Part shown: positions 5,366-27,368 of the stretch, piece by piece | Position numbering within the stretch: position 1 is the stretch's first letter | Layout of the letters: each line of letters starts with the position of its first letter | Virus record (IMG/VR): IMGVR_UViG_3300024520_000047 | Coordinates: 1-64,000 of that record | Direction: 5' to 3' (one strand) | DNA length: 64,000 bases | The notes under the pieces: model-generated | The model's database searches: none | Told to the model about the DNA's origin: nothing | What the model saw: only the letters and a program-made list of their open reading frames with translations | Position numbers and translations under genes: made by a program

Positions 5366-8300
5366 CTACTCTTCGTCCCATTCAATTTCGTCGGATTCTC
5401 TAGGCCAACTATAAGGAATATCGGTTCCCGGTCTAATATCCTGACTCCCATAAGAATCTTGTTGTCTTTTCCATGGATGTCCGGGGTCTCTATTAATAAC
5501 GGCATTCTCTAAACCAAATAATTTAGCTAATTCCTTCATTTCATCTTTTAGGGTATTAAATCTTTCTCTCCATGAAGTTTCATAAACCTTCCCATCTGGA
5601 TTAATATAATCCGAGTCTCTTCTATTATAGTCTTCAACTGCTTCAGGATGTAACTCTGCGAAGTCTTCCTCATACCTATAAAAGTCGGGCCATTTTGCAT
5701 GGTATCCTATATCTCTCATAGGTATTTCTTCCATGGAGTAAGGGTCATCCAACTTCCCCACTATATCATTCCCCCAATCATCATACTCCTCTTTTTTCTT
5801 ATAAAACTTTAAGATGTCCTTCCAAATATTATCCGCCGTTACACTATCGTCGAGTACTGGAACATAAACATCAATGCGTGCTTCGCCTGGCATATTCCCC
5901 GGCACCGTACTTAGATAATAATCAAACCCCAAAAAATTAAATGGAGAATTCTTCACCAAATAATTGTTCAATGCGGTCACTGGTTCCTGTGGTGTCGGGT
6001 CCACATTCATAGCATAATGTTGTTTACCTCTTCTAATGGACCATGGTGGTTCACCTTTGGGGTGGTCTAGTTCTTGCTTTTTGTTGTCTCTATTAAAGGG
6101 AAAATCCTGTTCATTCAATTCTTCTCTTCTAAAGGTGGGATTATAAATCCATGTATCAGTGGGGTATATTCTTTTCTCTCTTCCCATCCATTTGTTTACT
6201 GCTGTCCCAAACCTCTTATCTTCGTCGGTGAGGCCTATAGGTTCTATTTCATAATATTTTAAATCAGCATCAGGACCTTCCCAGTTTTCGGGTTGTCGAA
6301 ATTTAATAGCCGTAACCACATAAGGTTCATATAAGTCAGGTTTTCTTCCCCCTGTCGTATATTTTCTTCTCCACCCTATACTCTCTATTACCATTATCTC
6401 ATCTCCTATCATTAATTGTGGGTTTACTTTATCTTGAGATTGTTCATTTAATTCTTCTCCTCTAGAGTCTGGTCTTAACATCCATGTGTCGTTAGGATAA
6501 AGATGTGTCAATCTCCTCCATCCTCCACCCGCCCTTAAATCGGCTTGCATTTCTTCAGGGGTCAATTCTTTACGTTCTATTTCATAATGTACGTATTTGT
6601 CGTTAAAGGTATTGTTTTTTATTGATTCTTTGATTTTCACTACTACATAAGGGACATATATTTCTGGTGGGTTGAAACTTGCTCCTTCAGGTTGGTTGTG
6701 TTGAAGTACGAGTATCTCATCTCCTATCATTAATTGGGGATTAAGTTTATCTTTAGTATGTTCTTGTAATACTTCGGGGTCTTCTACTTTTACCCATTTA
6801 TCAAAATAGGGTGCAATCACTTTATAACCTACCCTTCTCCCTTCTGTGTATCTCAATAACTCGTCCTCATCTTTCTTATCCATTAACAACCATAATAGTT
6901 GGGTACCTTCATCTATGTCGAGACCAGACCCTTCATATCCTCTAGTCCAGCCATATCTGGGACTACCTCCACCTCTTCCCTCTGTACTCCACTTCATTTC
7001 CTCATTCTCATCTATTACAGTATAAGTGTGATATAACTTGGGGAATCTTTCAGAAGTAATAATCTGCATACCATTCATAAACTCCCGTCTTTGGTCACTA
7101 TCTTCATCTACATCTATAACCTTAATTTTATCACCCGGTTTTAAAGGAGGATTAACTTCTACTTTCTTACTATCTTGTTCTTGTAAAGATGGTGGTGTGG
7201 GGGACATAATGTACCTCACTTCATTAGGATACAACCAACGAAAATCGTACCCACCTTTTTTGTGTGACTTCTTCCACTTGTTAATTTCAGATAACGGTAA
7301 AAGAAGATATCTCTTCCCTCGTTCCTCCACTCTTTTTCCGTATGCCCGTTCCCTCCCGTGTTCCTCCGTTTCTGGCGTTTTTTGTATAATCCTATAAGGG
7401 ACGAATAAGTCTGGTTGTGTAGTATGGGTTTCTATGTCATCTCGATGGTACCAACCCCTTCCTTCGTGCCACTTAAACCCCATTAACTCTGCAGTCTCTT
7501 CATAATTATGCCAATCTCCTTGCAAGGTATCTTTGACTTCCTGATTCTCCATAAATTCCTTTATTTCGTCGTCCGTCATATATTCAACATCTGGGTCTTC
7601 ATATGCCACTACCGTTATCGTATCTCCCACATTTATGTAGGGATTAACTTTTTCTTGATGTTCTTGTAAAGATTTTGGGGTGGGGGGAGAAATGATGTAT
7701 TTTTCTTCCGAAGGGTACAGCCAACGATAATCTAATCCCTTCACTCGTCCAGAGGCCCATATCTCCCTCTTTTCGTCCTCATGTTCTTCCACTTCAGGTA
7801 GTGTTAAAAGAAGATATCTCATCACATCTCCTTCTTTCCATCCTATTTCTACTTTTTGTACAATCCTATAGGGTACGAATAAGTCTGGATTCTGGTCATT
7901 TAACTCCTTTTTATGATACCATCCCTTACCTGGCCATCGTGTATAGCCCATTAACTCTGCAGTCTCTTCAAAATTATGCCAATCTCCTTCCAATGTATCT
8001 TGGAGGTCCTGATTCTCCATAAATTCCTTTATTTCGTCGTCTGTCATATATTCAACATCTGGGTCTTCATGTGCAATTACAGTTACAGTGTCCCCTACAT
8101 CAATTGGGGGATTAACTTTTTCTTCCTGTTCTTGTAATATTTCTTCTTCCTTATTTACTATTATCCATTGGTAAGGGCCTGATGCCTTTAATTCTTCCTT
8201 TCCGTCCTTTTCCCACTCTTGCCTTCTCCCCCTCTTTCTTTCTTCTCTACTTATTCCATATCCCCATATATCTCCTTTTATTTCTCCTTTCCATGGGTCT

Positions 8301-11300
8301 CCTTGTATTCTCTTTCTTCCTGTTGGTGCCTCATTATTATATACTATATCCTCCACTACATAATTTACAAATAACTCTAACAATTCACCATCATTCAACA
8401 CATATCCATCATCATCCACTATCTGTTCATTCCTATTAGTCCAATAGGGTAGGACTTCACCAGATGCAGCGTTGTCTATAAGTTTTATTACATCCCCTAC
8501 CTTTAATGTAGGTCTACTTATCGGTTGGGATTCTTCATTTAAAATTTCTTCTTCCTCTCTTTTAAAACCAGGACGGAATATCCATTCATCTCCTACTTCA
8601 TAAATAATCTTAGTAGTCATTGTCCATAACCCCTTCCTTTTCCCTTTCTCATCCCAATTCTCCACTTCCCACCTTTCTTTCTCATCGTCCCAATAGGGAA
8701 ATCTACCACTCATAGGTTCAATGTGATAACTAAGTTTCCCTTTAGTGCGAGGTTCCCTAACTCTTTTTATTACCTTATAAGGTATAAAAGTCTCTGGTTC
8801 ATTCTCATGGGTACCATCTACATGTAAAACAATAATCTCATCTCCTTCTTCTAAGTCTGGACTAGGATTTTTTTGTCTTTCTTCCTGTAGGTGAGCAATG
8901 GATGGCTCGTACTTACCTATTTTTAACCACTTATGTCCATTTACTATCATATCCTGATGTAAATTGGCATCGTTAAAGTCTACAAGTAAATCGAGCCTCA
9001 TTACTACATACCCATATACTTGTCTCTTATCCCAGCCTTTATCCCCCTCACCTGTCACTATCCATCCTTCAGCACTTCCATCGTGCCATAATGGGGTTAA
9101 CACCACATACTCATCCCATAAGTTAAGATAACTATCCTTGTCTGTCTTCTCTATTATTTTAATCATATCTCCCGGTTCCAATGGGGGACTAATCTCTCGT
9201 TCCTCTTGTTCTTGTAATACATCACCCCTCAATTTACGTTTGGCGTTGTCTTTGTACTTCGCTCTTTCTTCATCAGATAATTCTACCTTTAACCATTGGT
9301 GGTCACGGTCACGACTTAAGACTTTTAAGTGACGATGGAGGTGACCTGGTAATCCTGGTGTGTCTTGGAACTTTTCCAAATACCCACTCTGTTGTAATTT
9401 ATACAGGTCCTCTATGGTAATAACAATATAATCTCCTTCTTTTTTTGGGGTCCCATATGAAGGATGCCATACCCAATACAATGCAAATGGTGTGGGCGTA
9501 CCGAAAGGCGTTTGTTCTTTTCTTTCTGGTATATCTATAGGTCGTATGATGTCTCCAGATTTTAAAACAGGACTCACTTCTTCTTCCCTTTGTTCCCGTA
9601 ATGTTTTCTTAATATCTTTATTTGTATCAGTTTTTACAATTTCTTTGAACTTATCCAAATAAACTATTCTATCCGAATCTACATTTATTAATTGAGTATT
9701 TGGGGTTAGGTATTTATCTTTAACTTTAATATAGTATACACCATCATCCTTTATACCCAAATCACTTATGAAACCATCAATATAATTTTCATCGTCTATG
9801 CTCTGAGACAATAACCCCTTTAACCCATTCTTAGTTAATTCAGTTGATGGGTCACCTTTGTTTTCATCAGGTTTTTCTTTTGTTGCCTCATACTTCTCTA
9901 AGTATTGGTCTAGTGCTTTAGTGGGCTCTCTCCAATCGGGGTCTTCTTTACCTACTTCATTTCTACCCACTATATTATTGATGAGCATATAGATGGGTGC
10001 ATGTAAAAGTATATTATGCTTAATATTTGGAACGTACTTCAAAATATCATTAGTGACATCATCAAAAATTACCTTATTCCACTTTCCAGTCTTAAACTCT
10101 TGTGCCATATACCAAGCAGCAGCGTTTGCATTAGGACCACCAACATACTCATTTTCTTTTGGGTTTGGTGGTACATCTTCGCCAGCTTTCCTATAGAGTC
10201 CAGATGTTATTCCAAAATCATGACCCTTTGCCCAATCCCTAATACTTGGTGGGTCAAACGCTAATCTTCTTTCTTCATTTTCAGGAGTGTAACCATTGAA
10301 ATCATCTGATGCAATAATAACCCATTGATTAGGGTCTGTAGCTTTATGAAAAGGTACCGCTTTTAATTCCTTACTTACCCATGATTTACCAGCAGATGAT
10401 GTTCCATCTATTAATATAGTAGATTTATCACTTAATCCTTGTTCTCTTTGTTCCCGTAATGTTTTCTTAATATCTACCCCATGCTTAGGTCCCAATGGTG
10501 GGTCCAATAAAAACTTCTGGTTAAGATAATCTCTTAACAAATTTTCCACAAACCAATCTGGAACTGGTTCATCATCTGGTTGGGCTGCAGCAACATCTGC
10601 AACATATCGTGCAAATTTAAGTTTGTATTTATCCCTAATCATTTCCAGTAATCCATCCGAGACAAAGAAAATTTTACTCAAGGGGTCATCACCCAATGCA
10701 ACATCAGGAATGTAATCCCCTTCAGCAATGTCCATGGCTTTGAGTACTACCTTCCCCCACCATCGTTTATATCCTTTGGTATCTTTAAGTGCTGGAGTAA
10801 CAATTTTATTTAATGCTCGGGTAGCGGTAATCCCCACCGCCGCAAATAAAACCTGAGGTAAAAAGAAAGGAATAATTCTCCATAATGATTTAAAAACCCC
10901 TCTACCGATATCGCTTGCTATTCTTTTATTGGTAGCTGCTTCCACCAATGCTTTAAGTTGACCAAAGGTAATAGGTCCTTGTGCTTTACAAAATCCTTTT
11001 ACATTACAAATATTTTCGGTTACGTCTCTTGATGGTGCAACAAAGCCTGATTCTGGGTCTGTCTCACTTCCTTCATATTCGTACTCATCTTCATAATCAG
11101 TTTCTTCATCGTCATCGGGAATCTCAATTTTTGCTACGTCTTCTTCCCATTCTTCTTCAGTATCATATGGTTGTAACTCTATTGGTTCTAATAGGCCTTG
11201 ACCAAACATATCGGCTGCTTCATGGATGTACTCCTTGGGTGGGAAGTGGTCTGGTCTAGTAGCGCCCTTTACGGTTACATAATTAACCCCTATACCTGTT

Positions 11301-14300: not shown

Positions 14301-14485
14301 TCTCTAGTAGGGAGGAGAGGTACCATTCCCTTCATGTGTTCCTTAAGGGTTGTTTTTGTTGGAGAATAGGTACGGTGGGGAAATAAGGGACCTATACTGT
14401 CTTCATATAAATGTAACTTTTTTCTTAAGTCAGTACCCATAAGACCTTGGTCTAATGCATCTTTTATTTCACTTAGTGTCGGCAT
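5366..14485 (-). CDS. giant acidic modular polyprotein P1 (3039 aa): 2 B-repeats, P-loop (CPT-like) kinase module, 9 A-repeats, other modules; LxE linkers
   Basis: Uninterrupted ORF; repeats and linkers visible in translation; IDGTSSAGKS Walker A at ~10380-10420. Confidence 0.9.
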   Translation of the reverse strand: MPTLSEIKDALDQGLMGTDLRKKLHLYEDSIGPLFPHRTYSPTKTTLKEHMKGMVPLLPTREPNSQSFRNSPEHNPEPNNRALEVPVETFIHYLDRHEKSEVEKFVKNHLEELESFYKGIAEEIAAGRIEDPDDYEEIYAHGSPYDGFDHELTQFDHRLTKLGLIDYRKEWNRDAVLLPVPYVLNEWLENIAQQYRPDAFVGFGGYVEIPEPQEPNLTDPTAFSLRKESTSLQEQVHEDDQWEEEDEGISYSPFTKKEIAILNFLAKNFTKEDLIQITTSTDLYPYSGNIGKRWKDAMKLFGHTMPEGWGEMEPKAEASKYAKWALDNWDEEIRGEDGEMDYSKVTKPIKVLPKWYNVNYEETVSQVEFKSGDVDLIAFDEDDALNKGNREFFDWGGNTDVDDYGDSERFEHETTSAEYKGLAEEIKKLIKEQPLTEQDRNKDSWTDEEAEGMDRSAFTPVESKILNTLKSTFTRNELSHISTNTFAYGGNQLAKRWVDLMKLFGIKTSPGTRGMEQRVDASKYAKWASDNWDFAEDLGDYSKIKAPFKELPKWYNVDYEETVDQTEYRRGSVEIMAFDEDDAYERGRDEFYDWNGEVDTYDYGEHEIIDSEISDVTYQGLAESTSSRRTDEEITQFLNDNYKDKFLKLYNLYTLGKEHGEKLVGGVSDASIKQFLKEVQFILYSNRRIPQWTGQSNVWDYTGDGYIPWDRSPFGRMSLHSTVIKWVQNLLLEDILSKEEHIKNAYEWLDTQFPTVVPNEYYPFGEGQFTDAIRSITHIAGLTWHEAQIVVDNFWREKRNAGKITASGKNDRLDEDKKRTLTKGLLEEEEHKKMLFNEDSDFPNINPAKSPNQLKKIYAHFKESLFNYWDNKGPHNDPHILKLLGLDTRKERGLYKIIDEWLVEWHGGREKAIEVAQEKLKGIQEVWDGGYDFKYVVTSIDEKELPWNVDQKKVRKERGWSVEDEIGVFVIVDGGGMANLALGGHDTYTLWDIFHDHQWWSDGDYEEECRTCGLRRSVRDESEDDLTRANRVSDEPDEALKEEVRQEIVEVLEENITDLLNATGIGVNYVTVKGATRPDHFPPKEYIHEAADMFGQGLLEPIELQPYDTEEEWEEDVAKIEIPDDDEETDYEDEYEYEGSETDPESGFVAPSRDVTENICNVKGFCKAQGPITFGQLKALVEAATNKRIASDIGRGVFKSLWRIIPFFLPQVLFAAVGITATRALNKIVTPALKDTKGYKRWWGKVVLKAMDIAEGDYIPDVALGDDPLSKIFFVSDGLLEMIRDKYKLKFARYVADVAAAQPDDEPVPDWFVENLLRDYLNQKFLLDPPLGPKHGVDIKKTLREQREQGLSDKSTILIDGTSSAGKSWVSKELKAVPFHKATDPNQWVIIASDDFNGYTPENEERRLAFDPPSIRDWAKGHDFGITSGLYRKAGEDVPPNPKENEYVGGPNANAAAWYMAQEFKTGKWNKVIFDDVTNDILKYVPNIKHNILLHAPIYMLINNIVGRNEVGKEDPDWREPTKALDQYLEKYEATKEKPDENKGDPSTELTKNGLKGLLSQSIDDENYIDGFISDLGIKDDGVYYIKVKDKYLTPNTQLINVDSDRIVYLDKFKEIVKTDTNKDIKKTLREQREEEVSPVLKSGDIIRPIDIPERKEQTPFGTPTPFALYWVWHPSYGTPKKEGDYIVITIEDLYKLQQSGYLEKFQDTPGLPGHLHRHLKVLSRDRDHQWLKVELSDEERAKYKDNAKRKLRGDVLQEQEEREISPPLEPGDMIKIIEKTDKDSYLNLWDEYVVLTPLWHDGSAEGWIVTGEGDKGWDKRQVYGYVVMRLDLLVDFNDANLHQDMIVNGHKWLKIGKYEPSIAHLQEERQKNPSPDLEEGDEIIVLHVDGTHENEPETFIPYKVIKRVREPRTKGKLSYHIEPMSGRFPYWDDEKERWEVENWDEKGKRKGLWTMTTKIIYEVGDEWIFRPGFKREEEEILNEESQPISRPTLKVGDVIKLIDNAASGEVLPYWTNRNEQIVDDDGYVLNDGELLELFVNYVVEDIVYNNEAPTGRKRIQGDPWKGEIKGDIWGYGISREERKRGRRQEWEKDGKEELKASGPYQWIIVNKEEEILQEQEEKVNPPIDVGDTVTVIAHEDPDVEYMTDDEIKEFMENQDLQDTLEGDWHNFEETAELMGYTRWPGKGWYHKKELNDQNPDLFVPYRIVQKVEIGWKEGDVMRYLLLTLPEVEEHEDEKREIWASGRVKGLDYRWLYPSEEKYIISPPTPKSLQEHQEKVNPYINVGDTITVVAYEDPDVEYMTDDEIKEFMENQEVKDTLQGDWHNYEETAELMGFKWHEGRGWYHRDDIETHTTQPDLFVPYRIIQKTPETEEHGRERAYGKRVEERGKRYLLLPLSEINKWKKSHKKGGYDFRWLYPNEVRYIMSPTPPSLQEQDSKKVEVNPPLKPGDKIKVIDVDEDSDQRREFMNGMQIITSERFPKLYHTYTVIDENEEMKWSTEGRGGGSPRYGWTRGYEGSGLDIDEGTQLLWLLMDKKDEDELLRYTEGRRVGYKVIAPYFDKWVKVEDPEVLQEHTKDKLNPQLMIGDEILVLQHNQPEGASFNPPEIYVPYVVVKIKESIKNNTFNDKYVHYEIERKELTPEEMQADLRAGGGWRRLTHLYPNDTWMLRPDSRGEELNEQSQDKVNPQLMIGDEIMVIESIGWRRKYTTGGRKPDLYEPYVVTAIKFRQPENWEGPDADLKYYEIEPIGLTDEDKRFGTAVNKWMGREKRIYPTDTWIYNPTFRREELNEQDFPFNRDNKKQELDHPKGEPPWSIRRGKQHYAMNVDPTPQEPVTALNNYLVKNSPFNFLGFDYYLSTVPGNMPGEARIDVYVPVLDDSVTADNIWKDILKFYKKKEEYDDWGNDIVGKLDDPYSMEEIPMRDIGYHAKWPDFYRYEEDFAELHPEAVEDYNRRDSDYINPDGKVYETSWRERFNTLKDEMKELAKLFGLENAVINRDPGHPWKRQQDSYGSQDIRPGTDIPYSWPRESDEIEWDEE
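6395..6736. repeat. 24-bp direct repeat at starts of A-repeats 8 and 9 (encodes QLMIGDEI)
   Basis: tatctcatctcctatcattaattg at 6395-6418 and 6713-6736. Confidence 0.85.
7380..8140. repeat. recent tandem duplication of A-repeats 5 and 6
   Basis: ~7480-7620 and ~7950-8090 near-identical; both encode EDPDVEYMTDDEIKEFMENQ...DTL.GDWHN.EETAELMG. Confidence 0.9.
9588..10475. repeat. perfect 30-bp direct repeat flanking the P-loop kinase module
   Basis: ctttgttcccgtaatgttttcttaatatct at 9588-9617 and 10446-10475; both lie in DIKKTLREQRE linkers. Confidence 0.95.
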
Positions 14486-17125: not shown

Positions 17126-17129
17126 TATA

Positions 17130-17137: not shown

Positions 17138-17163
17138 CTATTCAATACAAGAATAGTGAAGTG

Positions 17164-18626: not shown

Positions 18627-18663
18627 AATTTGTGTTTTTTTAATTTATTAATCTTTATGTTGG

Positions 18664-18876: not shown

Positions 18877-18901
18877 TCTTCTTTTTTAGAATTAATTTAA
18901 A

Positions 18902-18985
18902 TCTAGAGCCCCTACCTGACACAATATCAGGTAGGTTATCTAGTCAGGCCGAATAAGAATTCAGCTCCACCACCCTTTCGGGTTA
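18902..18985 (-). ncRNA. candidate structured RNA directly 3' of tRNA-Gly
   Basis: Hairpins ACCC-GAAA-GGGT, CTGAAT-TCTT-ATTCGG and a 9-bp CCTACCTGA/TCAGGTAGG; possible closing GGAGCT/GGCTCT. Confidence 0.4.
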
Positions 18986-18989
18986 ATAG

Positions 18990-19062
18990 AGCGGAAGGAT
19001 AGGATTTGAACCTCCGTCCCCATACTGGTAGTATGGTGCTTTACCAATTAAGCTACTCCCGC
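18990..19062 (-). tRNA. tRNA-Gly, anticodon ACC (atypical; one-nt bulge in T-stem; CCA not encoded)
   Basis: GCGGGAG acceptor/CTTCCGC + U73; D-arm GCTT/AAGC; anticodon arm CCATA-CTACCAG-TATGG; T-loop TTCAAAT. Confidence 0.8.
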
Positions 19063-19066
19063 TTAT

Positions 19067-19309
19067 TTAATGATGTGTGACAGTCCATGTTCTATAGGTA
19101 CTATCCTGAAAATCGGTATATGTTTTCATGGCCTGAAGAATATCCACCGCATCAATACCTAATAATTTTATAGCATCTTTCTCACTAAGTCCATACTTCT
19201 GTATAATCGAAAATTTCTTTTCTCCGATTTGAGTTCGAAGGAAATGCATCGTCTGGTCCCAATGAAGGAATGCCCCCGTGTAAACACTATCTCTATTTTC
19301 ATTTTTCAT
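19067..19309 (-). CDS. hypothetical protein
   Basis: 80 aa; ATG 4 nt after promoter -7 box. Confidence 0.65.
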   Translation of the reverse strand: MKNENRDSVYTGAFLHWDQTMHFLRTQIGEKKFSIIQKYGLSEKDAIKLLGIDAVDILQAMKTYTDFQDSTYRTWTVTHH

Positions 19310-19313
19310 AAGG

Positions 19314-19344
19314 CAAAGATAAGAAAAAAATATTAATAAACAAA
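19314..19344 (-). promoter_or_regulatory. Bacteroidota sigma promoter
   Basis: TTTG-N19-TATCTTTG. Confidence 0.75.
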
Positions 19345-19430
19345 ATTTAAATTGATAAAATATTAATGGGGTAATTTATTTATTCCCCCTAATTTTATCT
19401 TATTATAAGAGTAGATAATAGTTCTTCTTA

Positions 19431-20000
19431 ATGAATCCCAACCGTATAAAATCTATCCGCCGCACCTATATTATATTTTCTATAATAGTAGGAATTGTTG
19501 CTCCTATTTTATGCTATTGGTTAATTCCTCATTTTGACATAAAACACGACCCTTTATCTAAATTTGGTATCTCCGAACCCACTTCCCATATCTGGTTAGT
19601 CTCATTAATGTTTATTGCCATTGGATTATGGTTAAATGGGGAATATCGGATTGGGGAAATGATTAAGAAAAAAAAATGGCGTCCTTTATTGAAGTGGTTA
19701 CTGAGAATTTCTACTTTTTCATTATTATTAATGGCAGTAATAGATATGAGTTGGCACTGGACACATAAAACTTTAGCTTTACTTTTTTTCTGTGGATATA
19801 ATGTTTTTGTGTTTGCCTTTGGTATTGTGCGTTCTTTAACTTATGTTAGAAGAGGAATGTTTTCAGTAATAATGGCTACGCTTATGTTATCCACATCTTT
19901 ATTAATTCTTCCATTTCCAAGTTATGGTGTTGCTGAAATATCATATATATTTCTGATAGTGCTGTGGAACACTAAAGTCTTATTTAGGAAAAAATTATAA
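19431..20000 (+). CDS. polytopic membrane protein (DUF998-like)
   Basis: ~6 hydrophobic helices; PLSKFG and H..LALLFF motifs resemble DUF998. Confidence 0.6.
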   Translation: MNPNRIKSIRRTYIIFSIIVGIVAPILCYWLIPHFDIKHDPLSKFGISEPTSHIWLVSLMFIAIGLWLNGEYRIGEMIKKKKWRPLLKWLLRISTFSLLLMAVIDMSWHWTHKTLALLFFCGYNVFVFAFGIVRSLTYVRRGMFSVIMATLMLSTSLLILPFPSYGVAEISYIFLIVLWNTKVLFRKKL

Positions 20001-23000
20001 GGTTTCTTTCCATAAATTTATTAATCGGTTAGCAGTTGGTATTATGTTGCGTTTGGCTTCTCTAAGAGTTACTTCTTTATTTTTATTTTTAAGAGAATGG
20101 ATGGTGGTATCCCAGATAAGGTTTTTAATTTTATCACCATCTTCACTTAAGAGTCCACTATCCTTTTTTAATACAGTAGAATAGGTATCAATCCAGTCTT
20201 TTCCACCAATTAAAAAGTGGGAATAAAAATTCTCATTTGTCATCTCTTTATTTTTAACTTCACTTAAAAAATCAAAAATTAGTTTTCTTTTTTCAACTAG
20301 TTGGGCTGTGGTTACGTGTTGGGAACGTACTTTAATAAAAGCAGTTAAATCCATTTTATCAAACGACTCAAAGAACCTCCTTTTTATTAAAAAATCCTTT
20401 TGGGCTGCTTGTAAATGTCTGTTAACCTCTTCTGTCATATCTCCACGCAACTTTCCTCCCATTGTAAGGGTGTAGTCCGACTTTTTCTCAAAGTCTCTTA
20501 AATCGAAGATATTAATTGTATCTCCAATTTGAAATGGGATATTACTTAGGTTACCACTCTTTGCAATATCAACTATTTTCCCAGTTGGTGTCATATAAAG
20601 TAAAAAGGTCTGAGAGTTTTTACCCCAACCACCTTTGTATTCAAATCTTCCAATGATTAATAATCGTCTAATATAATTAGGAATGTTAGGTCTTTCTTCT
20701 TCTGGTAATTGTGGAATAATGGCTTCCGTTAACGGAGTGTTCCTGATGATAATCCATTTATCTCTCCCTCCTCCATCATCAGCATAATAATCATAGTCTT
20801 CTACTCCTTGATATAATCCCAAGTGTCCATCGTAAGTATCTATCTCGTATTTAATTCCTCCTCTAAACATATCACCTCTCGGTTCTTCGGATGCATTGCC
20901 TTCATATACATGTACCACGATTCCTACAGTAGTATTGGGTATCGTCAGTGTTGTAGTTCCGGGAGGTGCGGGGTCCATTTCTAAGTCCCAAATAAAAATT
21001 TTATCTCCTACTTTAAGTGGTGGACTTATTTCCTCTTTGGGTATTTTGGTGGTATCGATTTTTTGTTCCTTTAAAGTATTGAAATGATAGGCATCCGTAA
21101 TCTCCCAATCATCCGATTCATAATCTCCATGCTCATAGGTATGCATTTCTCCGCCCCACCCATAAAAATCTTCCCTCGATTTCTCTTCCGCATCCGTTGC
21201 TCCAAACGCGGTGACGTTTGCGCTACCCCTTTTAAATACTTGTTCCCAACCACTTTCTTCTGCCTCTACTTCATATTCGGAGGGGTATTCTTTTCTTGCA
21301 TTTTTAATTTGTCCATAATCTCCATCGTCTGCTTCGTGTCTATTCTCTAGTGCCCAGCGTGCATATTTGCTTATTATTGTCCAGATTTGAGCACTTCCCT
21401 CTCCACTGTTGGGTTCACCAAATAGTTTCATTACATCCTCATATCTAGAAGTAACTTGCCGTTGTATATCAGTTTTAAAAGTTCTGGTGGCAATTGCTTT
21501 TAATTCATCGAACGTAAATTCTCTAACAATAGTATTTAATATTTTAACTTCGAGTGCGGTAAAAGGACCATACTCTACATATAAGTCATCATCCTCTAAT
21601 CCACTCTCGGCATCTTGTTCGTTCAATCTTCTGGATGTAATATTCTTGCCACTAGCATCAATTTCTTTTTGTCGTGCCTCTATCTCTTGGGGTATATTGG
21701 ATACATGTTTTTTCACCATAATCCACTTATCGTTAGTCGTAAGGATTCTATTTCCCCTATCCCATTCAATATTTTCTCCTGTTATTGGTAACATGTTCCA
21801 ATACAAATTACGGAAGGTGGGTTCATTTCCAAAAGTTATTTGTTCTGTATTCACGGGTTCGGGAGAAGTAACATAATAAGTCTCCATGATAGTAGGAAAA
21901 GTATCTTCCCCATGTAATTCACCTCTACTTCGCGTTCTATACATGCCAGAACCTGCAGATTGTTTATATCTGGTATCTTTATCTACATCTACCACTCTAA
22001 TAACGTCTCCAATATTTAAAGATGGATTAAGTTTTTCTTTCTGTTCAGTAATCGGTTTTTTATGAACCTTAATCCATTGGTATATCCAAGGGTATAATAG
22101 TTTTGCGGTACCTCTACCTACCATATAGTCCCCATTTAAATAATCTTGATGTTTGTCTGCTGGAAGAAGTGTATATCTCCAAGGCCACTGTGCTTTGTGC
22201 CCAGCAGACTCTTTTTCTACTACTATGTATGGTGTTAATATCTCAGGTCTTTCCGCTTCTCCTCGCCCTTTCATCCTCTCCCTCTCCCTGTCTATATCTA
22301 TTACTCGTATACTATCACCCACTTCTAACTCTGGACTTAATTGGGTTTCTTTTTGTTCTCTTAAAATATATGGTGTGTCACCACCCCATATTTCTACTTC
22401 CTTGCCTACCCCTTTATCATTTCCTTCCCACTCGCCTGTCAGTGCAACCAATTCCATGTTGTCTATCCTCTCTATTATTTGACGTGCCCAAGCTTTTACA
22501 ACAGGGTTGGGGGTTAATCCTCTTAAACGATTATAAGATATGAAATCTCTTTCATCTGGTGGACCAATATTCGTAGTATCAATTAATCCTAATTTATATA
22601 AATCTTCATTGATGGTACCCCATAAATCATATAATTCCATTTGAGCCGTTTCAATTTTATCCGCCAAAAGGCCTATCTCACCTCTTCCTCCTTCTCCTCC
22701 ACCGAATCCACCGTATTTAAAATTTCTTACTCCACCTTCAGTATATGAGTCCTCATAACTGGTGAGTAAAAGTTTAGCTGCTAGAGCTAATTTCTTATAT
22801 ATTCTGAAAACCTCTTGTGTATAATTCTGGTGTAAAAACTTCTTTAGGGGTAAATTCTCACTCTGTTCTTTTATGGTTTCCCGATGTGTAGTACTTTCTA
22901 TCTCCCACCCATCAGATTCCCAATCTCCATAATCATAGGTCTCCATCTCACCACCCCAGTCGTACCAATCAGCTGTAGCCCTATCAGTCACATCCTGTGA

Positions 23001-26000
23001 ACTAAATCCGGGTATATCAACAGAACCGTGTTTGAATATTTTTTCCCATCCGCTTTCTTCCGCCTCTACTTCAAAGTAAGAGGGATAAATTTTAACTGGA
23101 GTTTTAACCTGTGCATAATCTCTTTTTTCATCGACCTCACCTGCAGCTTCACCCCAGTTATCCACCGCCCATCTTGCATATTTGCTCGCTATTACCCAAT
23201 CCTCCATGGTACGAGCGGGTATCGAAAATAATTTCATTATATCATTATATCTCTCTTCTAAGGCACGGGGTAAATTAGCGGCATCACTCTCCCCAATCAT
23301 CTCTAAGTCCTCTGAGGTAAACTCTTGGGCTAACTTATTCAATAACTTGACTTCCATGTTGGTGAAGGGAGTAAAGTCATAGTATTGGTCGTCATCATAG
23401 AATCCTTTATCTTTACCAAATTCCATTTTTTCTTCGTCTAACTGTAAACCTCCACGGTCTATCTTGCTCAATGCATCTAAATTCCCAAAGGAAGGATGGT
23501 CGGTTATCTTATCTTTTTTACTTTGTCTCATTACATCCCATACTCTAGGCTTCATCTTCATGTGATTACTCACCATATACCCTATCTCTTCTGGGTCACC
23601 ACCTAAACTCTCAATGAATTCACTATACTCATTCACTAACTGGGTGGAAACTTTTTCATGACCATGTGCGGTAGGTTGTCCTGTTTTAGGATTTACACCT
23701 AATGTGGCTAACTTACCTAGGTCATGAAAATATGCTGACAAAATTAAATTTATATTCTCAGGTTGTTCAGCAAACGCTCGGTTGGTTACCGTAATAATAT
23801 GTTTAAGTACATTTCCTTCTGGATGCCATTCAGGATTTTGTTTGGCCTTCCATTGGTCCATTAATATTTGTTGTAATGGTCTGGGTGAAGCATTGTATAA
23901 TTCTTTAAAGTTAGTCACTGATTCCCCTAATAAATCGATGTCATCATCCCACATCCCTTTATTTTTCTCCACCAGAATCCATGTATCGGTGTCGGGCATT
24001 AGATATCTCATGATTGCCTTATTTGAAAGAACACCGGGGCGGTCGGGGTAAGACACATCTTTCATGGGTCTATTAATACCATACCAATATTGGTCCCGCT
24101 TGGGTGTAGTGGTAACCCTATAAGGGACAAACAGTTCAGGAACTTGGTCGGGTATTTCTCCTTCTTTATCTTTAACATCTATTACTATTATCTCATCTCC
24201 ACTTTCTAAGGGTGGGTTTACTTTTTGTTGGTCTATGTTCTCGGTGAGACTTGCTGGGTCTGTAGGTTTTGGTGGGCCGAAATTTCCCTCATCATCTTTT
24301 GCCGATGGTTCTTTACTTTGAGGGACCAATTCATACAAGTCATCATATAAGATGTCATTAAAATATTCTTCACTAATATCTGGGTACCAATAACCATCAA
24401 AGTATTTTCCATCTACCTCTAAGTGGTCTCCCCGTTTACCCTCATTATAGTCATCTCCTCGTCCAAACTCTTCTATCATAATCTCCCCAAAAAGTTGGTC
24501 TGGAGTAAGACGTGCCATGTCTCTCATTACATCTTCCAAAGGTCGACTAGCATAATCTTCATGAAACTGAAAGAAATCTGTATTATCCCAATCGTCATCA
24601 CTTATCCACCTTTTTAAGTCACTTTCTATTATCCACGAATAACTTCCATTATTATTATCTCTTACCCATTTTCCTGTTCCGTCGAACCAGTCCTCTATCT
24701 TATCCCGAATATCGTCAAAGATGGCACGTTTGGTTGCATCTTCCTGTTCTATACTATAGGCGCGGGTAATCTTATTTCTAATTTCATCTATCTCACTCTC
24801 TTTTTCGGCAGCAATATCATCCTCAAAATCATTGTCTACATGACCCTCCAATAGTCTGCCGGCCACTTCTTTATCTTTAATCCCAAGAATTTCCATAATC
24901 ATTTTCCAACTTCCATCATCGAGATTATCTAACATCCCCTCATAAAATTCGTTATGGTCATACCATCCATCCCAATCCCATGCGTCCTCACCACACAGAT
25001 ATTTCCGTATGAGTTCTTCATGATTGTCATCATCAAATAATCGAGCTAAATCATCACAATCCCATAATGATGTTACCGGAATGGGTGCTTGAGTATTCAT
25101 TATGTATCTTTTGAGTAACATGGTGACACCATCTCCTTGGATGCCTTGCATCCCTAACAGTTTAAGGTCTTCCCAACTTACCCCATCTTGGTCCCATTTT
25201 TTATAAAGATATTTAACTGCATTTTCAGGATAATCTTTCATTATCCATTCTTTGTCTTCATCTTCCATTACTGAATCAAAAGGCCATCCTCCATGAAATA
25301 AATCTAATTGTTGTTCTTCTTTAATAACTTCTACCGAAGTAGTATCGTTGAGGGTATCTCTGTCTGGATAAAGAGCATCATTAAGGAGTTCTAAGTGATA
25401 TTCCACCTCCGCATCGTGGTCTGCCCAATTAATAACCATACCCTCTTCATCAAAATCAAAATCACCTTCTAATTGGTACTCGGTGGTATCATAATATTGA
25501 CTCATTAATTCTACTGTCTCCTCATTTGCGTTCACGGTATCAGTTAACTCATCAATGGTATTAAGATATTCCAGTTCTACAGTACTCAAATATTCTGCTT
25601 GTAACTCTTCATAATAATACTGGTCTACATATTTATCTTCCATTTGGTCACAGTCACACTTTCCTTCATCTTTTTCATCCTCCGTACATTCCCTATACTC
25701 ATCTTTTTCATCATCATAAAACTCAGTCCACTGTATACATTCACAGTCCTCCTCACTTAATTCACCATAAAAATGACCCCCACTTTGGAGACACTCTTCT
25801 AATATTTCTTCTGACTCAGCCTCTTCAGCATAAAACTCTACAGTATAGTAATAGATATTCGGTAGAGGTTCCCATAATAAATTCGTTATATTCCAATCAC
25901 TAAAGCCCCCACCTTCTTTAATTATCAACCATAAGGTCGCAGCTATCTGTTTTCCATCACTACTACTAAAAATTCCCCCCACATCTAGATATTTCCGTAA

Positions 26001-27368
26001 AGTATTGTAAAAACTATCGAAGTGGTATAAACTTTCATTTAAACGATGAGCGGTTCTTATTAGAGAAATTATCTTTGGGGTTATCTCTCCCCCATCATTG
26101 TGAAATTCGTATTCTTCCTTTAAATATCTTTTAGGTGTGGTGTCTTTGGAATAAACCCATGTATAATTGCCGGGATACAAACTTTTGGGGTCTACATTTA
26201 ATTCGTAAAGAGTATCTAAAGTTATGTCATCCCAATTTTCAATTTTAATCCTTTCCTTCCCTACATCCTCATATTCTGTGGGGGTAAGAAGAGTATAGTA
26301 GGTGTTACGGTTTTCATCGACACTTACATTAACCACCATATAAGGGGTAAGTAATTCTGGTACGTCTTGCCACTCGATATCATCATCTCTATTATACCAT
26401 CCCATCTGACCTGCGTCCCACCTATATCCAGCATTCGCAGCGAGTTCCTCTAGACCACCACCTACTACATAACCCTGTGTTTCTAATACATCAGTTAGTT
26501 CTTCATCCGACAGGTAATGACTACGAAACCCTTTACGGTCAATAACCACTATCTTATCCCCTACTTCTAGTTTAGGGTTATGTCTCCATAATTGGTGTTG
26601 GTTTCTAATATTTTCTTCCTTTAGGGTTGGTGGTAGGGGGTCATTCGTTCCTAGGTCCAATAAAGCGTAATGACCATTCTTCATTCCCAAATTACTAATT
26701 CCTATATCCAACCATCGTCTTCCAGTTGCTTCAATTTCTTTACGAATATTAACAATGTCGTCATACACTTGTCGGCATTCGGGAGACCCATCTACTGGTG
26801 GGTGAATAAGAGCTTTTCCTGTAGGGTCCGAATAAAAATCTACATAAATAGGATTGTCTTCTCTACAACAACATCTAGTGAACATCTTTTCTTCAGGTGT
26901 GGTTGGGTGGGTTAGGAGTTCTAAAACAATAATATACGCTTGACTACTATCTGATGTATAATAAGGAGTCTTAAAAGGGGCGGTAGCAAATACATTTGCT
27001 ACATATTCATTTTGTTTACCTTTTAAACTTTGTGCTTGACGGTGTTCAGCTTCATCTCCAGTAATTTTAATTACTTTATCATCATCAAGAAGTGCAGCAA
27101 TACCATTTCCACCACTAATAATATCAATAACGTCACCTAAATTATTATCAGTAATGTAATCCTTTAAAACCTTCTTAGGGTCAGCACTAAATTTAACTTT
27201 TCCGTGTTCAGCGTCTATTATATATTCTTCCGTATCCGGTACATCAATAGACTGATAAATGTCTTTACGTAACTCAGGGTCATTTCTAAAAGACTGGTCT
27301 ATCGCAACCTGTAATCCCGGGTCTAATTGTTTGGGTGATTCTTGTAATATATTAGGAGATTGTCTCAT
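19995..27368 (-). CDS. giant acidic modular polyprotein P2 (2457 aa): protein-kinase-like, HD hydrolase, 5 A-repeats, 2 B-repeats, Cys-rich module; LxE linkers
   Basis: Kinase motifs SGGNG/VIK/DIGISN/DLG; HD motifs WHPEG...HDLGK...HGHE; repeats visible in translation. Confidence 0.9.
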   Translation of the reverse strand: MRQSPNILQESPKQLDPGLQVAIDQSFRNDPELRKDIYQSIDVPDTEEYIIDAEHGKVKFSADPKKVLKDYITDNNLGDVIDIISGGNGIAALLDDDKVIKITGDEAEHRQAQSLKGKQNEYVANVFATAPFKTPYYTSDSSQAYIIVLELLTHPTTPEEKMFTRCCCREDNPIYVDFYSDPTGKALIHPPVDGSPECRQVYDDIVNIRKEIEATGRRWLDIGISNLGMKNGHYALLDLGTNDPLPPTLKEENIRNQHQLWRHNPKLEVGDKIVVIDRKGFRSHYLSDEELTDVLETQGYVVGGGLEELAANAGYRWDAGQMGWYNRDDDIEWQDVPELLTPYMVVNVSVDENRNTYYTLLTPTEYEDVGKERIKIENWDDITLDTLYELNVDPKSLYPGNYTWVYSKDTTPKRYLKEEYEFHNDGGEITPKIISLIRTAHRLNESLYHFDSFYNTLRKYLDVGGIFSSSDGKQIAATLWLIIKEGGGFSDWNITNLLWEPLPNIYYYTVEFYAEEAESEEILEECLQSGGHFYGELSEEDCECIQWTEFYDDEKDEYRECTEDEKDEGKCDCDQMEDKYVDQYYYEELQAEYLSTVELEYLNTIDELTDTVNANEETVELMSQYYDTTEYQLEGDFDFDEEGMVINWADHDAEVEYHLELLNDALYPDRDTLNDTTSVEVIKEEQQLDLFHGGWPFDSVMEDEDKEWIMKDYPENAVKYLYKKWDQDGVSWEDLKLLGMQGIQGDGVTMLLKRYIMNTQAPIPVTSLWDCDDLARLFDDDNHEELIRKYLCGEDAWDWDGWYDHNEFYEGMLDNLDDGSWKMIMEILGIKDKEVAGRLLEGHVDNDFEDDIAAEKESEIDEIRNKITRAYSIEQEDATKRAIFDDIRDKIEDWFDGTGKWVRDNNNGSYSWIIESDLKRWISDDDWDNTDFFQFHEDYASRPLEDVMRDMARLTPDQLFGEIMIEEFGRGDDYNEGKRGDHLEVDGKYFDGYWYPDISEEYFNDILYDDLYELVPQSKEPSAKDDEGNFGPPKPTDPASLTENIDQQKVNPPLESGDEIIVIDVKDKEGEIPDQVPELFVPYRVTTTPKRDQYWYGINRPMKDVSYPDRPGVLSNKAIMRYLMPDTDTWILVEKNKGMWDDDIDLLGESVTNFKELYNASPRPLQQILMDQWKAKQNPEWHPEGNVLKHIITVTNRAFAEQPENINLILSAYFHDLGKLATLGVNPKTGQPTAHGHEKVSTQLVNEYSEFIESLGGDPEEIGYMVSNHMKMKPRVWDVMRQSKKDKITDHPSFGNLDALSKIDRGGLQLDEEKMEFGKDKGFYDDDQYYDFTPFTNMEVKLLNKLAQEFTSEDLEMIGESDAANLPRALEERYNDIMKLFSIPARTMEDWVIASKYARWAVDNWGEAAGEVDEKRDYAQVKTPVKIYPSYFEVEAEESGWEKIFKHGSVDIPGFSSQDVTDRATADWYDWGGEMETYDYGDWESDGWEIESTTHRETIKEQSENLPLKKFLHQNYTQEVFRIYKKLALAAKLLLTSYEDSYTEGGVRNFKYGGFGGGEGGRGEIGLLADKIETAQMELYDLWGTINEDLYKLGLIDTTNIGPPDERDFISYNRLRGLTPNPVVKAWARQIIERIDNMELVALTGEWEGNDKGVGKEVEIWGGDTPYILREQKETQLSPELEVGDSIRVIDIDRERERMKGRGEAERPEILTPYIVVEKESAGHKAQWPWRYTLLPADKHQDYLNGDYMVGRGTAKLLYPWIYQWIKVHKKPITEQKEKLNPSLNIGDVIRVVDVDKDTRYKQSAGSGMYRTRSRGELHGEDTFPTIMETYYVTSPEPVNTEQITFGNEPTFRNLYWNMLPITGENIEWDRGNRILTTNDKWIMVKKHVSNIPQEIEARQKEIDASGKNITSRRLNEQDAESGLEDDDLYVEYGPFTALEVKILNTIVREFTFDELKAIATRTFKTDIQRQVTSRYEDVMKLFGEPNSGEGSAQIWTIISKYARWALENRHEADDGDYGQIKNARKEYPSEYEVEAEESGWEQVFKRGSANVTAFGATDAEEKSREDFYGWGGEMHTYEHGDYESDDWEITDAYHFNTLKEQKIDTTKIPKEEISPPLKVGDKIFIWDLEMDPAPPGTTTLTIPNTTVGIVVHVYEGNASEEPRGDMFRGGIKYEIDTYDGHLGLYQGVEDYDYYADDGGGRDKWIIIRNTPLTEAIIPQLPEEERPNIPNYIRRLLIIGRFEYKGGWGKNSQTFLLYMTPTGKIVDIAKSGNLSNIPFQIGDTINIFDLRDFEKKSDYTLTMGGKLRGDMTEEVNRHLQAAQKDFLIKRRFFESFDKMDLTAFIKVRSQHVTTAQLVEKRKLIFDFLSEVKNKEMTNENFYSHFLIGGKDWIDTYSTVLKKDSGLLSEDGDKIKNLIWDTTIHSLKNKNKEVTLREAKRNIIPTANRLINLWKETL

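What the first reader, a model, noticed from the sequence alone, without database searches (positions are those of the whole stretch)
5366..27368. Two giant LxE-punctuated polyproteins: candidate capsid-packaged, protease-processed effector system
Seen: P1 (3039 aa) and P2 (2457 aa) are chains of discrete modules, and module boundaries carry [L/I]-x-E-[Q/E/H/S/N/A]. P1: TLSE, SLQEQ, PLTEQ, GLAES, GLLEE, YIHEA, TLREQ x2, VLQEQ, HLQEE, ILNEE, ILQEQ, SLQEH, SLQEQ, VLQEH, ELNEQ x2. P2: ILQES, TLKEE, YLKEE, VIKEE, SLTEN, LLGES, QLDEE, TIKEQ, ILREQ, PITEQ, RLNEQ, TLKEQ, PLTEA, TLREA. All 14 A-repeats have the motif ~5-14 residues before their start. Known: T4 prohead protease gp21 cuts after E in (I/L)-x-E, and phiKZ/SPN3US head proteases process internal head proteins at x-x-E sites. 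Inference: each gene yields ~15-17 separate small proteins inside the maturing head, which are then ejected into the host. The cargo includes a protein kinase, a P-loop kinase, an HD hydrolase and repeat binder domains. I know of no described system with enzyme payload polyproteins on this scale. Caveat: LxE is common in acidic proteins, so the fixed position is the signal.
Basis: partly seen in the sequence, partly recalled or inferred. Interest (0 to 1): 0.92.

Follow-up and report, generated by a model that had tools for sequence, protein, structure and literature searches.

The report
Phage polyproteins with head-protease cut sites
Two giant genes of an uncultured T4-like jumbo phage encode chains of about 15 to 19 modules joined by the short motif that T4-type head proteases cut, so they probably make dozens of capsid-packaged proteins from two genes; no experiment has yet shown the cutting.

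Summary
Plain [LI]xE is not over-represented in P1 (3039 aa) or P2 (2457 aa). What stands out is where the motif sits, and the narrower form [LI]xE[Q/H].

Evidence that the motif marks module junctions:
- 17 of 30 independently defined homology breakpoints lie within 8 residues of a site (4.2 expected).
- The motif L and E are the most conserved columns of the 14 A repeats.
- The motif flanks the same modules in more than 50 shuffled metagenomic relatives.
- It falls in low-confidence linkers of an AlphaFold model.

The window is bases 1-64000 of a 245,874-bp contig. At 209.8-217.6 kb that contig carries a T4-type head module: a gp20-like portal, a gp21-like Peptidase_S77 protease with its His and Ser motifs intact, a motif-rich scaffold-like protein and a gp23-like capsid protein.

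P1, P2 and many neighbouring proteins begin with 6-13-residue leaders ending in [LI]xE, like T4 capsid-targeting sequences.

Cleavage, packaging and ejection remain inferred. A zincin peptidase gene between P1 and P2 is a rival protease. The claimed protein kinase was not found. The idea resembles the "polyvalent proteins" described in 2017, so this is a new variant of a known kind.

The parts
5366..14485 (-). P1, 3039-aa polyprotein. Order of parts: 6-residue leader (MPTLSE|), N-terminal module, two B modules, two unknown modules, C module, P-loop kinase-like module, nine A repeats, C-terminal module. 18 candidate sites give fragments of 47-286 aa.
   Evidence: [LI]xE[QH] 13 observed vs 2.4 expected, z 7.5.
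19995..27368 (-). P2, 2457-aa polyprotein. 10-residue leader (MRQSPNILQE|S), five A repeats, two B modules, an HD-domain module (residues 1150-1312) and unknown modules. 14 candidate sites.
6110..9592 (-). Array of nine A repeats in P1 (residues 1632-2792). Each is preceded by L-x-E-[Q/E/H] in a polar linker.
   Evidence: Alignment A1. AlphaFold model: core blocks mostly pLDDT 84-91, both linkers 52-57. Weak, non-significant similarity to SH3/Tudor-like barrels.
10451..11218 (-). C module of P1 (residues 1090-1345). Helical, function unknown. Flanked by IHE|A and LRE|Q.
   Evidence: Flanked by [LIV]xE on both sides in all representative homologues shown, with two minor exceptions. 112 representative-cluster hits, many of them stand-alone proteins of 200-400 aa with their own [LIV]xE leaders. 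Model; no PDB match.
9593..10450 (-). P-loop kinase-like module of P1 (residues 1346-1631, Walker A GTSSAGKS). Bounded by identical DIKKTLRE|Q sites.
   Evidence: Sub-threshold Pfam CPT hit. Homologous giants carry PF13671.
23433..23921 (-). HD-domain module of P2 (H...HD motif, HPEG...FHDLGK).
   Evidence: Pfam HD 20.8 bits, cutoff 22. phrog_6931. tblastn hit to the tRNA nucleotidyltransferase of a phage, E 4e-8. Motif seen.
15818..17125 (-). 435-aa protein with a zincin HExxH peptidase motif (IAHELVHH...GGEIEDEAN). Leader MEINLKNIIQE|Q, and internal junction sites IYE131| and LSE218|. Either a rival processing protease or a cargo module.
   Evidence: The same module is embedded in 13 of 52 giant homologues, and its leader site projects onto their junction motifs.
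14485..15807 (-). 440-aa peptidoglycan hydrolase (M23 peptidase + PG-binding + phage tail lysozyme) with leader sites ITE7| and LNE17|. Likely a co-packaged wall-degrading protein.
48736..49317 (+). 193-aa lysozyme-like protein with leader MKLMDQLSYLIE|D. One of three otherwise unrelated window proteins that share a 12-residue leader.
49333..49860 (+). 175-aa protein with leader MKLLKHLSNIISE|Y.
54399..55541 (-). 380-aa protein with leader MRLITQLSILVE|D.
50224..52431 (+). 735-aa protein with leader MTTQSYLINE|T. It shares a module with the giant homologue P0030; the shared stretch begins near residue 211, close to the LTE224|Q site.

Best explanation
P1 and P2 are capsid-targeted polyproteins of a T4-like jumbo myovirus whose predicted host is a Bacteroidetes/Flavobacteria species.

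Proposed mechanism:
- Each giant starts with a short leader that resembles a T4 capsid-targeting sequence.
- Each consists of 15-19 independently folding modules joined by polar, flexible linkers. Every linker carries one hydrophobic-x-Glu motif, [L/I]-x-E followed mostly by Q, H, E or S.
- During prohead maturation the phage's gp21-type serine protease (Peptidase_S77, record 213471-214181) cuts after the Glu. T4 gp21 does the same at (L/I)xE in internal proteins, Alt, scaffold and capsid protein.
- The cuts remove the leader and separate the modules inside the head. The modules are ejected with the DNA.
- The cargo includes an HD hydrolase, a P-loop kinase-like module, SH3-like barrels, a helical C module and, from neighbouring genes, peptidoglycan hydrolases and a zincin peptidase.
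- Modules are exchanged between phages as cassettes bounded by the motif, and can exist as separate genes with the same leader.

Shown: the anatomy, the motif positions and their conservation, linker flexibility in one model, and the presence and catalytic motifs of the protease.
Inferred: protease specificity, cleavage, packaging, ejection and effector roles.
For: - Motif enriched and positioned at independently defined breakpoints.
- Motif L and E are the best-conserved columns of the A repeats.
- 93 of 103 A-repeat starts in 54 non-redundant giants have [LI]xE within 25 residues upstream (background 32%). The modal spacing is 6 and P1' is Q or H in 76 cases.
- The C module is flanked by the motif on both sides, next to unrelated sequence, in about 50 proteins.
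- Junction sites have more polar flanks than other [LI]xE sites (p about 1e-6) and lie in low-pLDDT linkers.
- Codons at the motif vary, so selection acts on the protein.
- A gp21-like protease, a gp20-like portal and a gp23-like capsid protein are in the same contig.
- The scaffold-like 560-aa protein has 18 [LI]xE (8.6 expected) and the neighbouring 243-aa protein has 10 (3.9 expected). The capsid protein has INE|A near residue 60, compared with T4 gp23 LTE65|A.
- 12 of 33 window ORFs of at least 150 aa have a leader, against 13 of 106 elsewhere in the genome (p 0.0035).
- The leader site of the stand-alone 435-aa gene coincides with junction motifs where that module is embedded in giants.
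- Other giant proteins of the same genome (3101, 2176 and 1696 aa) lack the pattern.
- T4 precedent: a 10-residue capsid-targeting sequence, with processing residues 8 and 10 (PMC9026906); all related proteases cut after Glu (PMC5694885).
Against: - There are no proteomic or biochemical data.
- The specificity of this particular protease is unknown. Relatives in phiKZ and SPN3US prefer A/S/G at P3.
- The motif at the N side of the C module, and often before A repeats, sits at a fixed distance from the domain. It could therefore be part of the fold or of a docking element.
- The C-terminal site of the C module is modelled in a helix of moderate confidence.
- P1 and P2 show no homology to any protein proven to be in a virion.
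- A zincin peptidase gene lies between the two giants.
- The 71 homologues were retrieved with a query containing the C module, so the universality of that module is by construction.
- Repeats share ancestry, which inflates raw motif counts.
Confidence: 0.62

Rival explanations
1. The polyproteins are processed by the zincin-like metallopeptidase encoded between them (435 aa, HELVHH...EDEAN), not by the head protease. This follows the proposal that polyvalent proteins are released by embedded peptidase domains. The cut could then fall before the hydrophobic residue rather than after Glu, and could happen in the head or after entry into the host.
For: The peptidase gene lies between P2 and P1, and the same module is embedded in 13 of 52 giant homologues. 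Iyer et al. 2017 predicted such autoprocessing.
Against: The same leader and motif occur on many stand-alone proteins, and on stand-alone C-domain proteins in other genomes. They also occur on the scaffold and capsid protein of the head module, which are classic head-protease substrates. The invariant Glu fits the P1 preference of the gp21 family. The peptidase itself carries the leader and internal junction sites, as any other cargo module does. A cyanophage homologue is a small protein in a replication module and has no leader.
Confidence: 0.12
2. The motif is not a cleavage site. It is a conserved linker or docking element, for example repeated capsid-targeting or scaffold-binding signals, or an N-terminal cap of each domain. 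P1 and P2 then stay intact as beads-on-a-string polyvalent proteins, as the N4 virion RNA polymerase does.
For: The motif often sits at a fixed distance from the following domain. Some giant virion proteins are packaged uncut. In T4 the targeting and processing functions of the leader are separable.
Against: Spacing to the domain varies from 4 to 14 residues and the flanks are polar and modelled as flexible. The motif marks both the N and the C sides of modules. It is equivalent to the leader site of stand-alone genes. The genome encodes a protease of the family that recognises this kind of motif.
Confidence: 0.14
3. P1 and P2 are cut by the head protease but are disposable assembly or core material, like the T4 scaffold or the phiKZ inner body, rather than a set of ejected effectors. 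The fragments are largely expelled or serve DNA packing.
For: The phage's own scaffold-like proteins are rich in the same motif. The giants are very acidic, with 20% D+E. Most modules have no recognisable enzymatic fold.
Against: Enzyme-like modules (HD, P-loop kinase-like) are present. Peptidoglycan hydrolases and a peptidase belong to the same module pool. Rapid cassette shuffling and modules that vary between relatives (PAP2, AAA_33, DUF192, lysozyme) fit a conflict-driven cargo better than a scaffold.
Confidence: 0.09
4. The motif is a footprint of recombination: short conserved junction sequences at the DNA level promote cassette exchange, with no role in the protein.
For: Homology breakpoints coincide with the motif. 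GAA is used for 29 of 32 motif Glu codons, against 69% overall.
Against: Leu is encoded by six different codons and the middle codon is free. Shared DNA is therefore at most a few bases, and conservation is at the amino-acid level. The motif is also kept at the N-termini of stand-alone proteins.
Confidence: 0.03

Closest known systems
T4 internal proteins IPI/IPII/IPIII and Alt, with their capsid-targeting sequence, processed by the gp21 prohead protease
   Same: Short N-terminal leader of about 6-13 residues ending in (L/I)-x-E. A gp21-family (S77) protease in the genome. Variable cargo with a conserved leader. An enzyme cargo (Alt) is ejected with the DNA. Scaffold and capsid protein carry the same motif.
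   Different: T4 cargo proteins are separate small genes, each cut only at its termini. Here up to about 19 modules are concatenated in one 2457-3039-aa chain with a site in every linker. There is no sequence homology to the T4 proteins, and P1' is mostly Q or H.
Polyvalent proteins of phages and conjugative elements (Iyer, Burroughs, Anand, de Souza, Aravind 2017, PMC5512222)
   Same: Giant multi-domain proteins with shuffled effector-type domains. A zincin peptidase and lysozyme or M23 domains lie in the same chain or next door. They were predicted to travel with the DNA and were compared to viral polyproteins.
   Different: That work proposed release by embedded peptidases and described no linker motif. 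Here a defined inter-domain motif matches the head-maturation protease. Most modules here (A, B, C) are not among the described domains, and no Pfam polyvalent-protein family reaches threshold.
Processed ejection and inner-body proteins of phiKZ, 201phi2-1 and SPN3US
   Same: Jumbo myoviruses with a gp21-related protease that cuts after Glu. Many head-internal proteins, some cut at several sites, are ejected into the host.
   Different: The motif there is A/S/G-x-E, which is at chance at the boundaries here. Cuts there mainly remove long N-terminal propeptides rather than separate many domains. There is no homology.
Polyproteins of eukaryotic RNA viruses
   Same: One translation product is cut at linker motifs by a viral protease into many functional proteins.
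   Different: Unrelated proteases and domains. Here the proposed cutting takes place inside a DNA phage capsid and the products are a delivered cargo, not the replication machinery.

Membership tests
Substrates of a T4-type (gp21, MEROPS S77) prohead protease / CTS-bearing head-internal proteins | The genome encodes a gp21-family protease with catalytic His and Ser | tested here: met
   L166:17474-18184 (-), record 213471-214181. phmmer vs T4 gp21 E 6.8e-21, 34% identity, ELNHP and SSRG motifs kept. Pfam Peptidase_S77 82.6 bits, cutoff 27.
Substrates of a T4-type (gp21, MEROPS S77) prohead protease / CTS-bearing head-internal proteins | N-terminal propeptide of about 7-20 residues ending in (L/I)-x-E | tested here: met
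   P1 MPTLSE6, P2 ...ILQE10. Giant homologues have E mostly at residue 8 or 11. 12 of 33 window ORFs of at least 150 aa, p 3e-4.
Substrates of a T4-type (gp21, MEROPS S77) prohead protease / CTS-bearing head-internal proteins | Cleavage after the motif Glu demonstrated by N-terminal sequencing or semi-tryptic peptides | not testable with these tools
   No proteomic data are available for this uncultured phage.
Substrates of a T4-type (gp21, MEROPS S77) prohead protease / CTS-bearing head-internal proteins | Physical presence in proheads or virions and ejection into the host | not testable with these tools
   Only context is available: neighbours are peptidoglycan hydrolases with the same leader.
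Polyvalent proteins (Iyer et al. 2017) | Phage or plasmid protein combining many disparate domains in one chain, with mosaic architectures among relatives | tested here: met
   15-19 modules. Relatives of 1700-3190 aa share modules in different orders and carry PAP2, AAA_33 and DUF192.
Polyvalent proteins (Iyer et al. 2017) | Hallmark domains such as the zincin-like MPTase and lysozyme in the chain or neighbourhood, recognised by the family models | tested here: inconclusive
   An HExxH...EDEAN module is next door and is embedded in 13 of 52 homologues. Only a sub-threshold Peptidase_M78 hit was found (E 0.03), and no Pfam polyvalent-protein family hit.
phiKZ/SPN3US-type processed ejection proteins | Cleavage motif A/S/G-x-E at processing sites | tested here: not met
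   [ASG]xE lies near 6 of 30 breakpoints, with 7.2 expected. It is not enriched overall.
ClpP-type (S14) head-maturation protease system | ClpP-fold protease encoded in the head module next to portal and capsid genes | tested here: not met
   Two ClpP paralogues with intact Ser-His-Asp lie 2-3.5 kb upstream of P2. Their neighbours are small unknown ORFs and a glutaredoxin. The portal and capsid genes lie 180 kb away beside the S77 protease.

The most novel reading that the evidence does not exclude
A widespread clade of uncultured T4-like jumbo phages of Bacteroidetes uses a true polyprotein strategy for its ejected proteome. Two genes give about 30 capsid-delivered proteins, cut apart by the head-maturation protease at a simple leader-and-linker grammar (M-x5-10-[LI]xE, and [LI]xE[QH] in every linker). 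The same grammar lets modules move freely between a stand-alone gene and a position in a chain. If so, the complete injected arsenal of uncultured phages could be predicted from sequence alone.
Probability: 0.5. Interest if true: 0.82.

Novelty: new variant of a known kind. Interest (0 to 1): 0.74.

Why it matters
If cleavage is confirmed, this would be the first phage system in which the head-maturation protease works as a polyprotein-processing enzyme for a large, modular, rapidly shuffled cargo.

It would link two fields: T4 head-assembly biochemistry and the computationally defined polyvalent proteins. It would also give a sequence rule, leader plus linker motif, for reading out which proteins an uncultured phage injects into its host.

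Most of the modules (A, B and C and several unique ones) have no known fold or function. They are therefore a defined pool of candidate early-acting host-takeover or anti-defence proteins.

The capsid-targeting leader and cut site might also be reusable for packaging foreign proteins, as was done with T4.

Tried and rejected
- Whole-length search of P1 against the 5.8-billion-protein set timed out. A regional search worked.
- Pfam, PHROGs and PDB sequence searches of P1, P2 and their individual modules gave almost nothing, apart from a weak HD hit and sub-threshold CPT and M78 hits.
- Foldseek of the A-repeat and C-module models gave no significant PDB match.
- No eukaryote-type protein-kinase motifs were found.
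- The ClpP pair upstream of P2 was considered as the maturation protease and set aside. They look like full-length ClpP proteins, they are not in a head-gene context, and a genuine S77 protease exists elsewhere in the genome.
- A ribosomal protein S21 gene suggested that head genes might lie beside it, as in published S21-encoding phages. They do not.
- T4 head proteins found nothing in the window or in the next 20 kb. The contig had to be walked for about 150 kb, using 12 look-ups and then 6 viral-contig scans.
- The T4 late-promoter consensus TATAAATA is not enriched.
- A DNA-level recombination signal at junctions was examined and judged weak.
- The 735-aa ORF beside the S21 gene was considered as a capsid protein. 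It is instead a module shared with a giant homologue.
Full report
**What is there.** The two ORFs are as described: P1 at 5366-14485 (-), 3039 aa, and P2 at 19995-27368 (-), 2457 aa. Both are uninterrupted. They are acidic (about 20% D+E) and have a higher G+C (0.37-0.39) than their surroundings (about 0.30). Standard libraries recognise almost nothing in them:
- a near-threshold HD domain in P2, residues 1190-1289 (Pfam 20.8 bits, phrog_6931, and a tblastn hit to a phage tRNA nucleotidyltransferase), with a clear H...HD motif;
- a Walker A motif in P1.

No protein-kinase signature was found.

Self-comparison shows two repeat families. The first is a B module of about 190 aa (P1 235-437 and 438-623; P2 1313-1501 and 1918-2101). 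The second is an A repeat of 105-160 aa, with nine copies in P1 and five in P2.

**Checking the motif.** Plain [LI]xE is not over-represented (53 vs 44.8 in P1; 40 vs 36.4 in P2). [LI]xEQ is (10 vs 1.4; 5 vs 1.3).

I defined boundaries independently of the motif, using a regional search that returned 71 metagenomic giant proteins of 1700-3190 aa. Their similarity to P1 and P2 comes in sharply bounded blocks.
- The block ends give 30 merged breakpoints. 17 lie within 8 residues of an [LI]xE[QEHSNA] site, against 4.2 expected. None of 2000 random placements reach this.
- The controls [ASG]xE, [LI]xD and [LI]xK are at chance.
- In the alignment of the 14 A repeats (26% mean identity), the invariant columns are the motif Glu at each end and three core residues. 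The motif Leu is at least 90% conserved.
- The residues between the motif and the domain start vary from 6 to 14 and are polar.

**Conservation in relatives.** The following holds across the related giants.
- Among 54 non-redundant giants, 93 of 103 A-repeat starts have [LI]xE within 25 residues upstream (background 32%). The modal gap is 6, and Q or H follows in 76 cases.
- The C module (P1 1090-1345) is preceded by [LIV]xE and followed, after 5-9 variable residues, by another [LIV]xE in essentially every representative. The sequence beyond these sites is unrelated between proteins. All 71 proteins contain this module because the query did, so its universality carries no information.
- The module also exists as stand-alone proteins of 200-400 aa (112 representative clusters). 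Their N-termini again read M-x6-10-[LIV]xE.
- Many giants start with M-x4-8-[LI]xE-Q, with the Glu at residue 8 or 11.

**Linkers.** Junction sites have markedly more polar flanks than the other [LI]xE sites in the same proteins (p about 1e-6). An AlphaFold model of one A repeat with both linkers has a confident beta-rich core (blocks mostly pLDDT 84-91). Both motif-bearing ends are low-confidence (52-57; residues 11-15 are below 50). Foldseek gives only weak, non-significant resemblance to SH3/Tudor-type barrels. The C module models as helical with one 60-residue helix and has no PDB match. Its N-side motif is disordered, and its C-side motif lies in a moderately confident helix. Codons at the motif differ (six Leu codons, a free middle codon), so the constraint is on the protein. 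GAA is somewhat preferred for the Glu.

**Neighbourhood.** Directly upstream of P1 lies a 440-aa M23 peptidase + PG-binding + phage lysozyme protein. Upstream of that, between it and P2, lies a 435-aa protein with a zincin motif (IAHELVHH...GGEIEDEAN). This module is embedded in 13 of 52 giant relatives.

Where that module is embedded, the position equivalent to the stand-alone protein's leader site (IQE11|Q) is a junction motif of the type [LI]NE|. The 435-aa protein also has internal sites at its own homology breakpoints, IYE131 and LSE218. The 735-aa ORF at 50224-52431 shares a module with giant P0030; the shared stretch begins near residue 211, close to its LTE224|Q site.

Three otherwise unrelated proteins (starting at 48736, 49333 and 54399) share a 12-residue leader, M[KR]L..QLS.L[IV]E. 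Overall, 12 of 33 window ORFs of at least 150 aa have [LI]xE with the Glu at residues 5-13 (4 expected, p 3e-4).

Two ClpP paralogues with intact triads lie upstream of P2.

**The protease.** The window is bases 1-64000 of a 245,874-bp contig (JGI Ga0255047_10000002, which is IMG/VR UViG_3300024520_000047). I walked the contig by exact-protein look-ups and then viral-contig scans. In order, it holds:
- a baseplate and fibre module with a gp25-like protein and a 3101-aa fibre-like giant;
- T4-type gp32, a RecA-like protein and a DnaB-like helicase;
- a hub module with giants of 2176 and 1696 aa;
- a sheath and a T4 gp13-like neck protein;
- a glycan-synthesis cluster;
- at 209.8-217.6 kb, a T4-type head module.

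In that head module, phmmer with T4 proteins gives portal E 1e-28, gp21 E 6.8e-21 and gp23 E 1.3e-29. Pfam confirms Portal_T4 (269 bits), Peptidase_S77 (82.6 bits, cutoff 27) and Gp23 (252 bits).

The 236-aa protease is 34% identical to T4 gp21 and keeps the ELNHP and SSRG motifs. Like T4 gp21, it has an LIE near its N-terminus. The adjacent 560-aa coiled-coil, scaffold-like protein has 18 [LI]xE (8.6 expected) and a 243-aa neighbour has 10 (3.9 expected). The portal is depleted in the motif. The capsid protein has INE|A near residue 60, compared with T4 gp23 LTE65|A.

Across the 217 kb read, only P1 (z 7.5) and P2 (z 2.6) among 37 proteins of at least 500 aa show meaningful [LI]xE[QH] enrichment. 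One 836-aa protein reaches z 3.4, but on only two sites. Leader-bearing proteins are concentrated in the window (12 of 33 vs 13 of 106, p 0.0035). The other giant proteins of this genome therefore serve as internal negative controls.

**Interpretation.** T4 gp21 cuts after Glu in (L/I)xE. The 10-residue capsid-targeting sequence of the internal proteins is enough for packaging, and its residues 8 and 10 govern processing. Alt is an ejected enzyme trimmed at both ends (PMC9026906; PMC5694885). The phiKZ and SPN3US proteases of the same family cut after A/S/G-x-E (PMC10052503).

The anatomy here is the T4 design extended. The same kind of leader is present, the same kind of protease is in the genome, the scaffold is rich in the motif, and the motif is repeated in every flexible linker of two giant chains. 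The most likely mechanism is therefore head-protease processing of capsid-targeted polyproteins into about 19 and 15 pieces (predicted sizes). The pieces would be delivered with the DNA together with wall-degrading enzymes.

This remains an inference: nothing here shows cleavage, packaging or ejection. The main rivals are:
- processing by the zincin peptidase, as proposed in general for polyvalent proteins (PMC5512222);
- an uncut chain in which the motif is a docking or linker element;
- a disposable scaffold-like role.

**Comparison and novelty.** The general idea of giant multi-domain proteins delivered with phage DNA, and the analogy to viral polyproteins, was published in 2017. Single-protein leaders cut by gp21 are classic T4 biology. 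I found no description of a defined inter-domain motif matching the head protease, conserved across a large family of shuffled giants and interchangeable with the leader of stand-alone genes. I therefore rate it a new variant of a known kind, of high interest, and directly testable by a simple co-expression assay.

The nearest cultured relatives by capsid protein are Flavobacterium phage vB_FspM_immuto, Microcystis phage Mel-JY01 and T4-like cyanophages. Several published huge phages share the capsid protein, a structural protein or the C module. None of the cultured phages has a P1- or P2-like gene.

Noticed in passing
window 29411-30019 (-) and 30255-30917 (-): Two adjacent ClpP paralogues (202 and 220 aa, 33% identical), both with the Ser-His-Asp triad, separated by an 80-aa ORF. 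They look like auxiliary proteostasis genes rather than a head protease. A DnaJ homologue lies at about record 69.8-70.8 kb.
   Followed up: partly
window 52428-52619 (-): A 63-aa ribosomal protein S21 gene (Pfam PF01165), as in published S21-encoding Bacteroidetes phages. Unlike in those phages, it is not next to the terminase, portal, protease or capsid genes here.
   Followed up: partly
window 48736-49317 (+), 49333-49860 (+), 54399-55541 (-); also record 184852-185214: Otherwise unrelated proteins share a nearly identical 12-residue N-terminal leader (M[KR]L..QLS.L[IV]E), reminiscent of the shared targeting peptide of the T4 internal proteins.
   Followed up: partly
window 5366-14485 and 19995-27368: The two giant genes have a G+C of 0.37-0.39 against about 0.30 for flanking genes. 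The cause is not resolved (amino-acid composition or a separate origin).
   Followed up: no
L009:10001-19306 (record 103211-112516); L012:3403-9933 (record 134924-141454); record 141876-146966: Three more giant genes in the same genome (3101, 2176 and 1696 aa), in the tail, baseplate and hub modules. They are T/N/G/S-rich, have no homology to P1 or P2 and no motif punctuation. The 2176-aa protein has a weak amidase hit.
   Followed up: partly
window 37778-38533, 39222-40655, 42778-43854, 43910-45829, 46885-47664: A run of accessory genes: Mom-like DNA modification, a DUF2828/DUF7788 (PHROG 'RNA-binding') protein, a glutamine-synthetase-like protein, a PcfJ-like protein and DUF932.
   Followed up: no
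L080 and L086, record about 189-203 kb: A cluster of sugar-nucleotide dehydratase/epimerase-like genes (the first judged from its sequence motif, the last from its many close homologues) followed by further ORFs that I read by eye as glycosyl-, methyl- and sulfo-transferase-like; none of the cluster was scanned against Pfam or PHROGs. Together they suggest glycan synthesis or modification by the phage.
   Followed up: no
L050:3728-6652 (record about 174.6-177.5 kb): Four tandem paralogues (225-260 aa) of a 'virion structural protein' family (phrog_8510).
   Followed up: no
window 56602-58368 (+) and 58555-61452 (+): The 588-aa and 965-aa proteins share a domain of about 200 aa. This domain is weakly similar to a structural protein of Pseudomonas jumbo phage PA5oct. 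The N-terminal half of the 965-aa protein is 36-39% identical to proteins of two 630-640-kb huge phages.
   Followed up: partly
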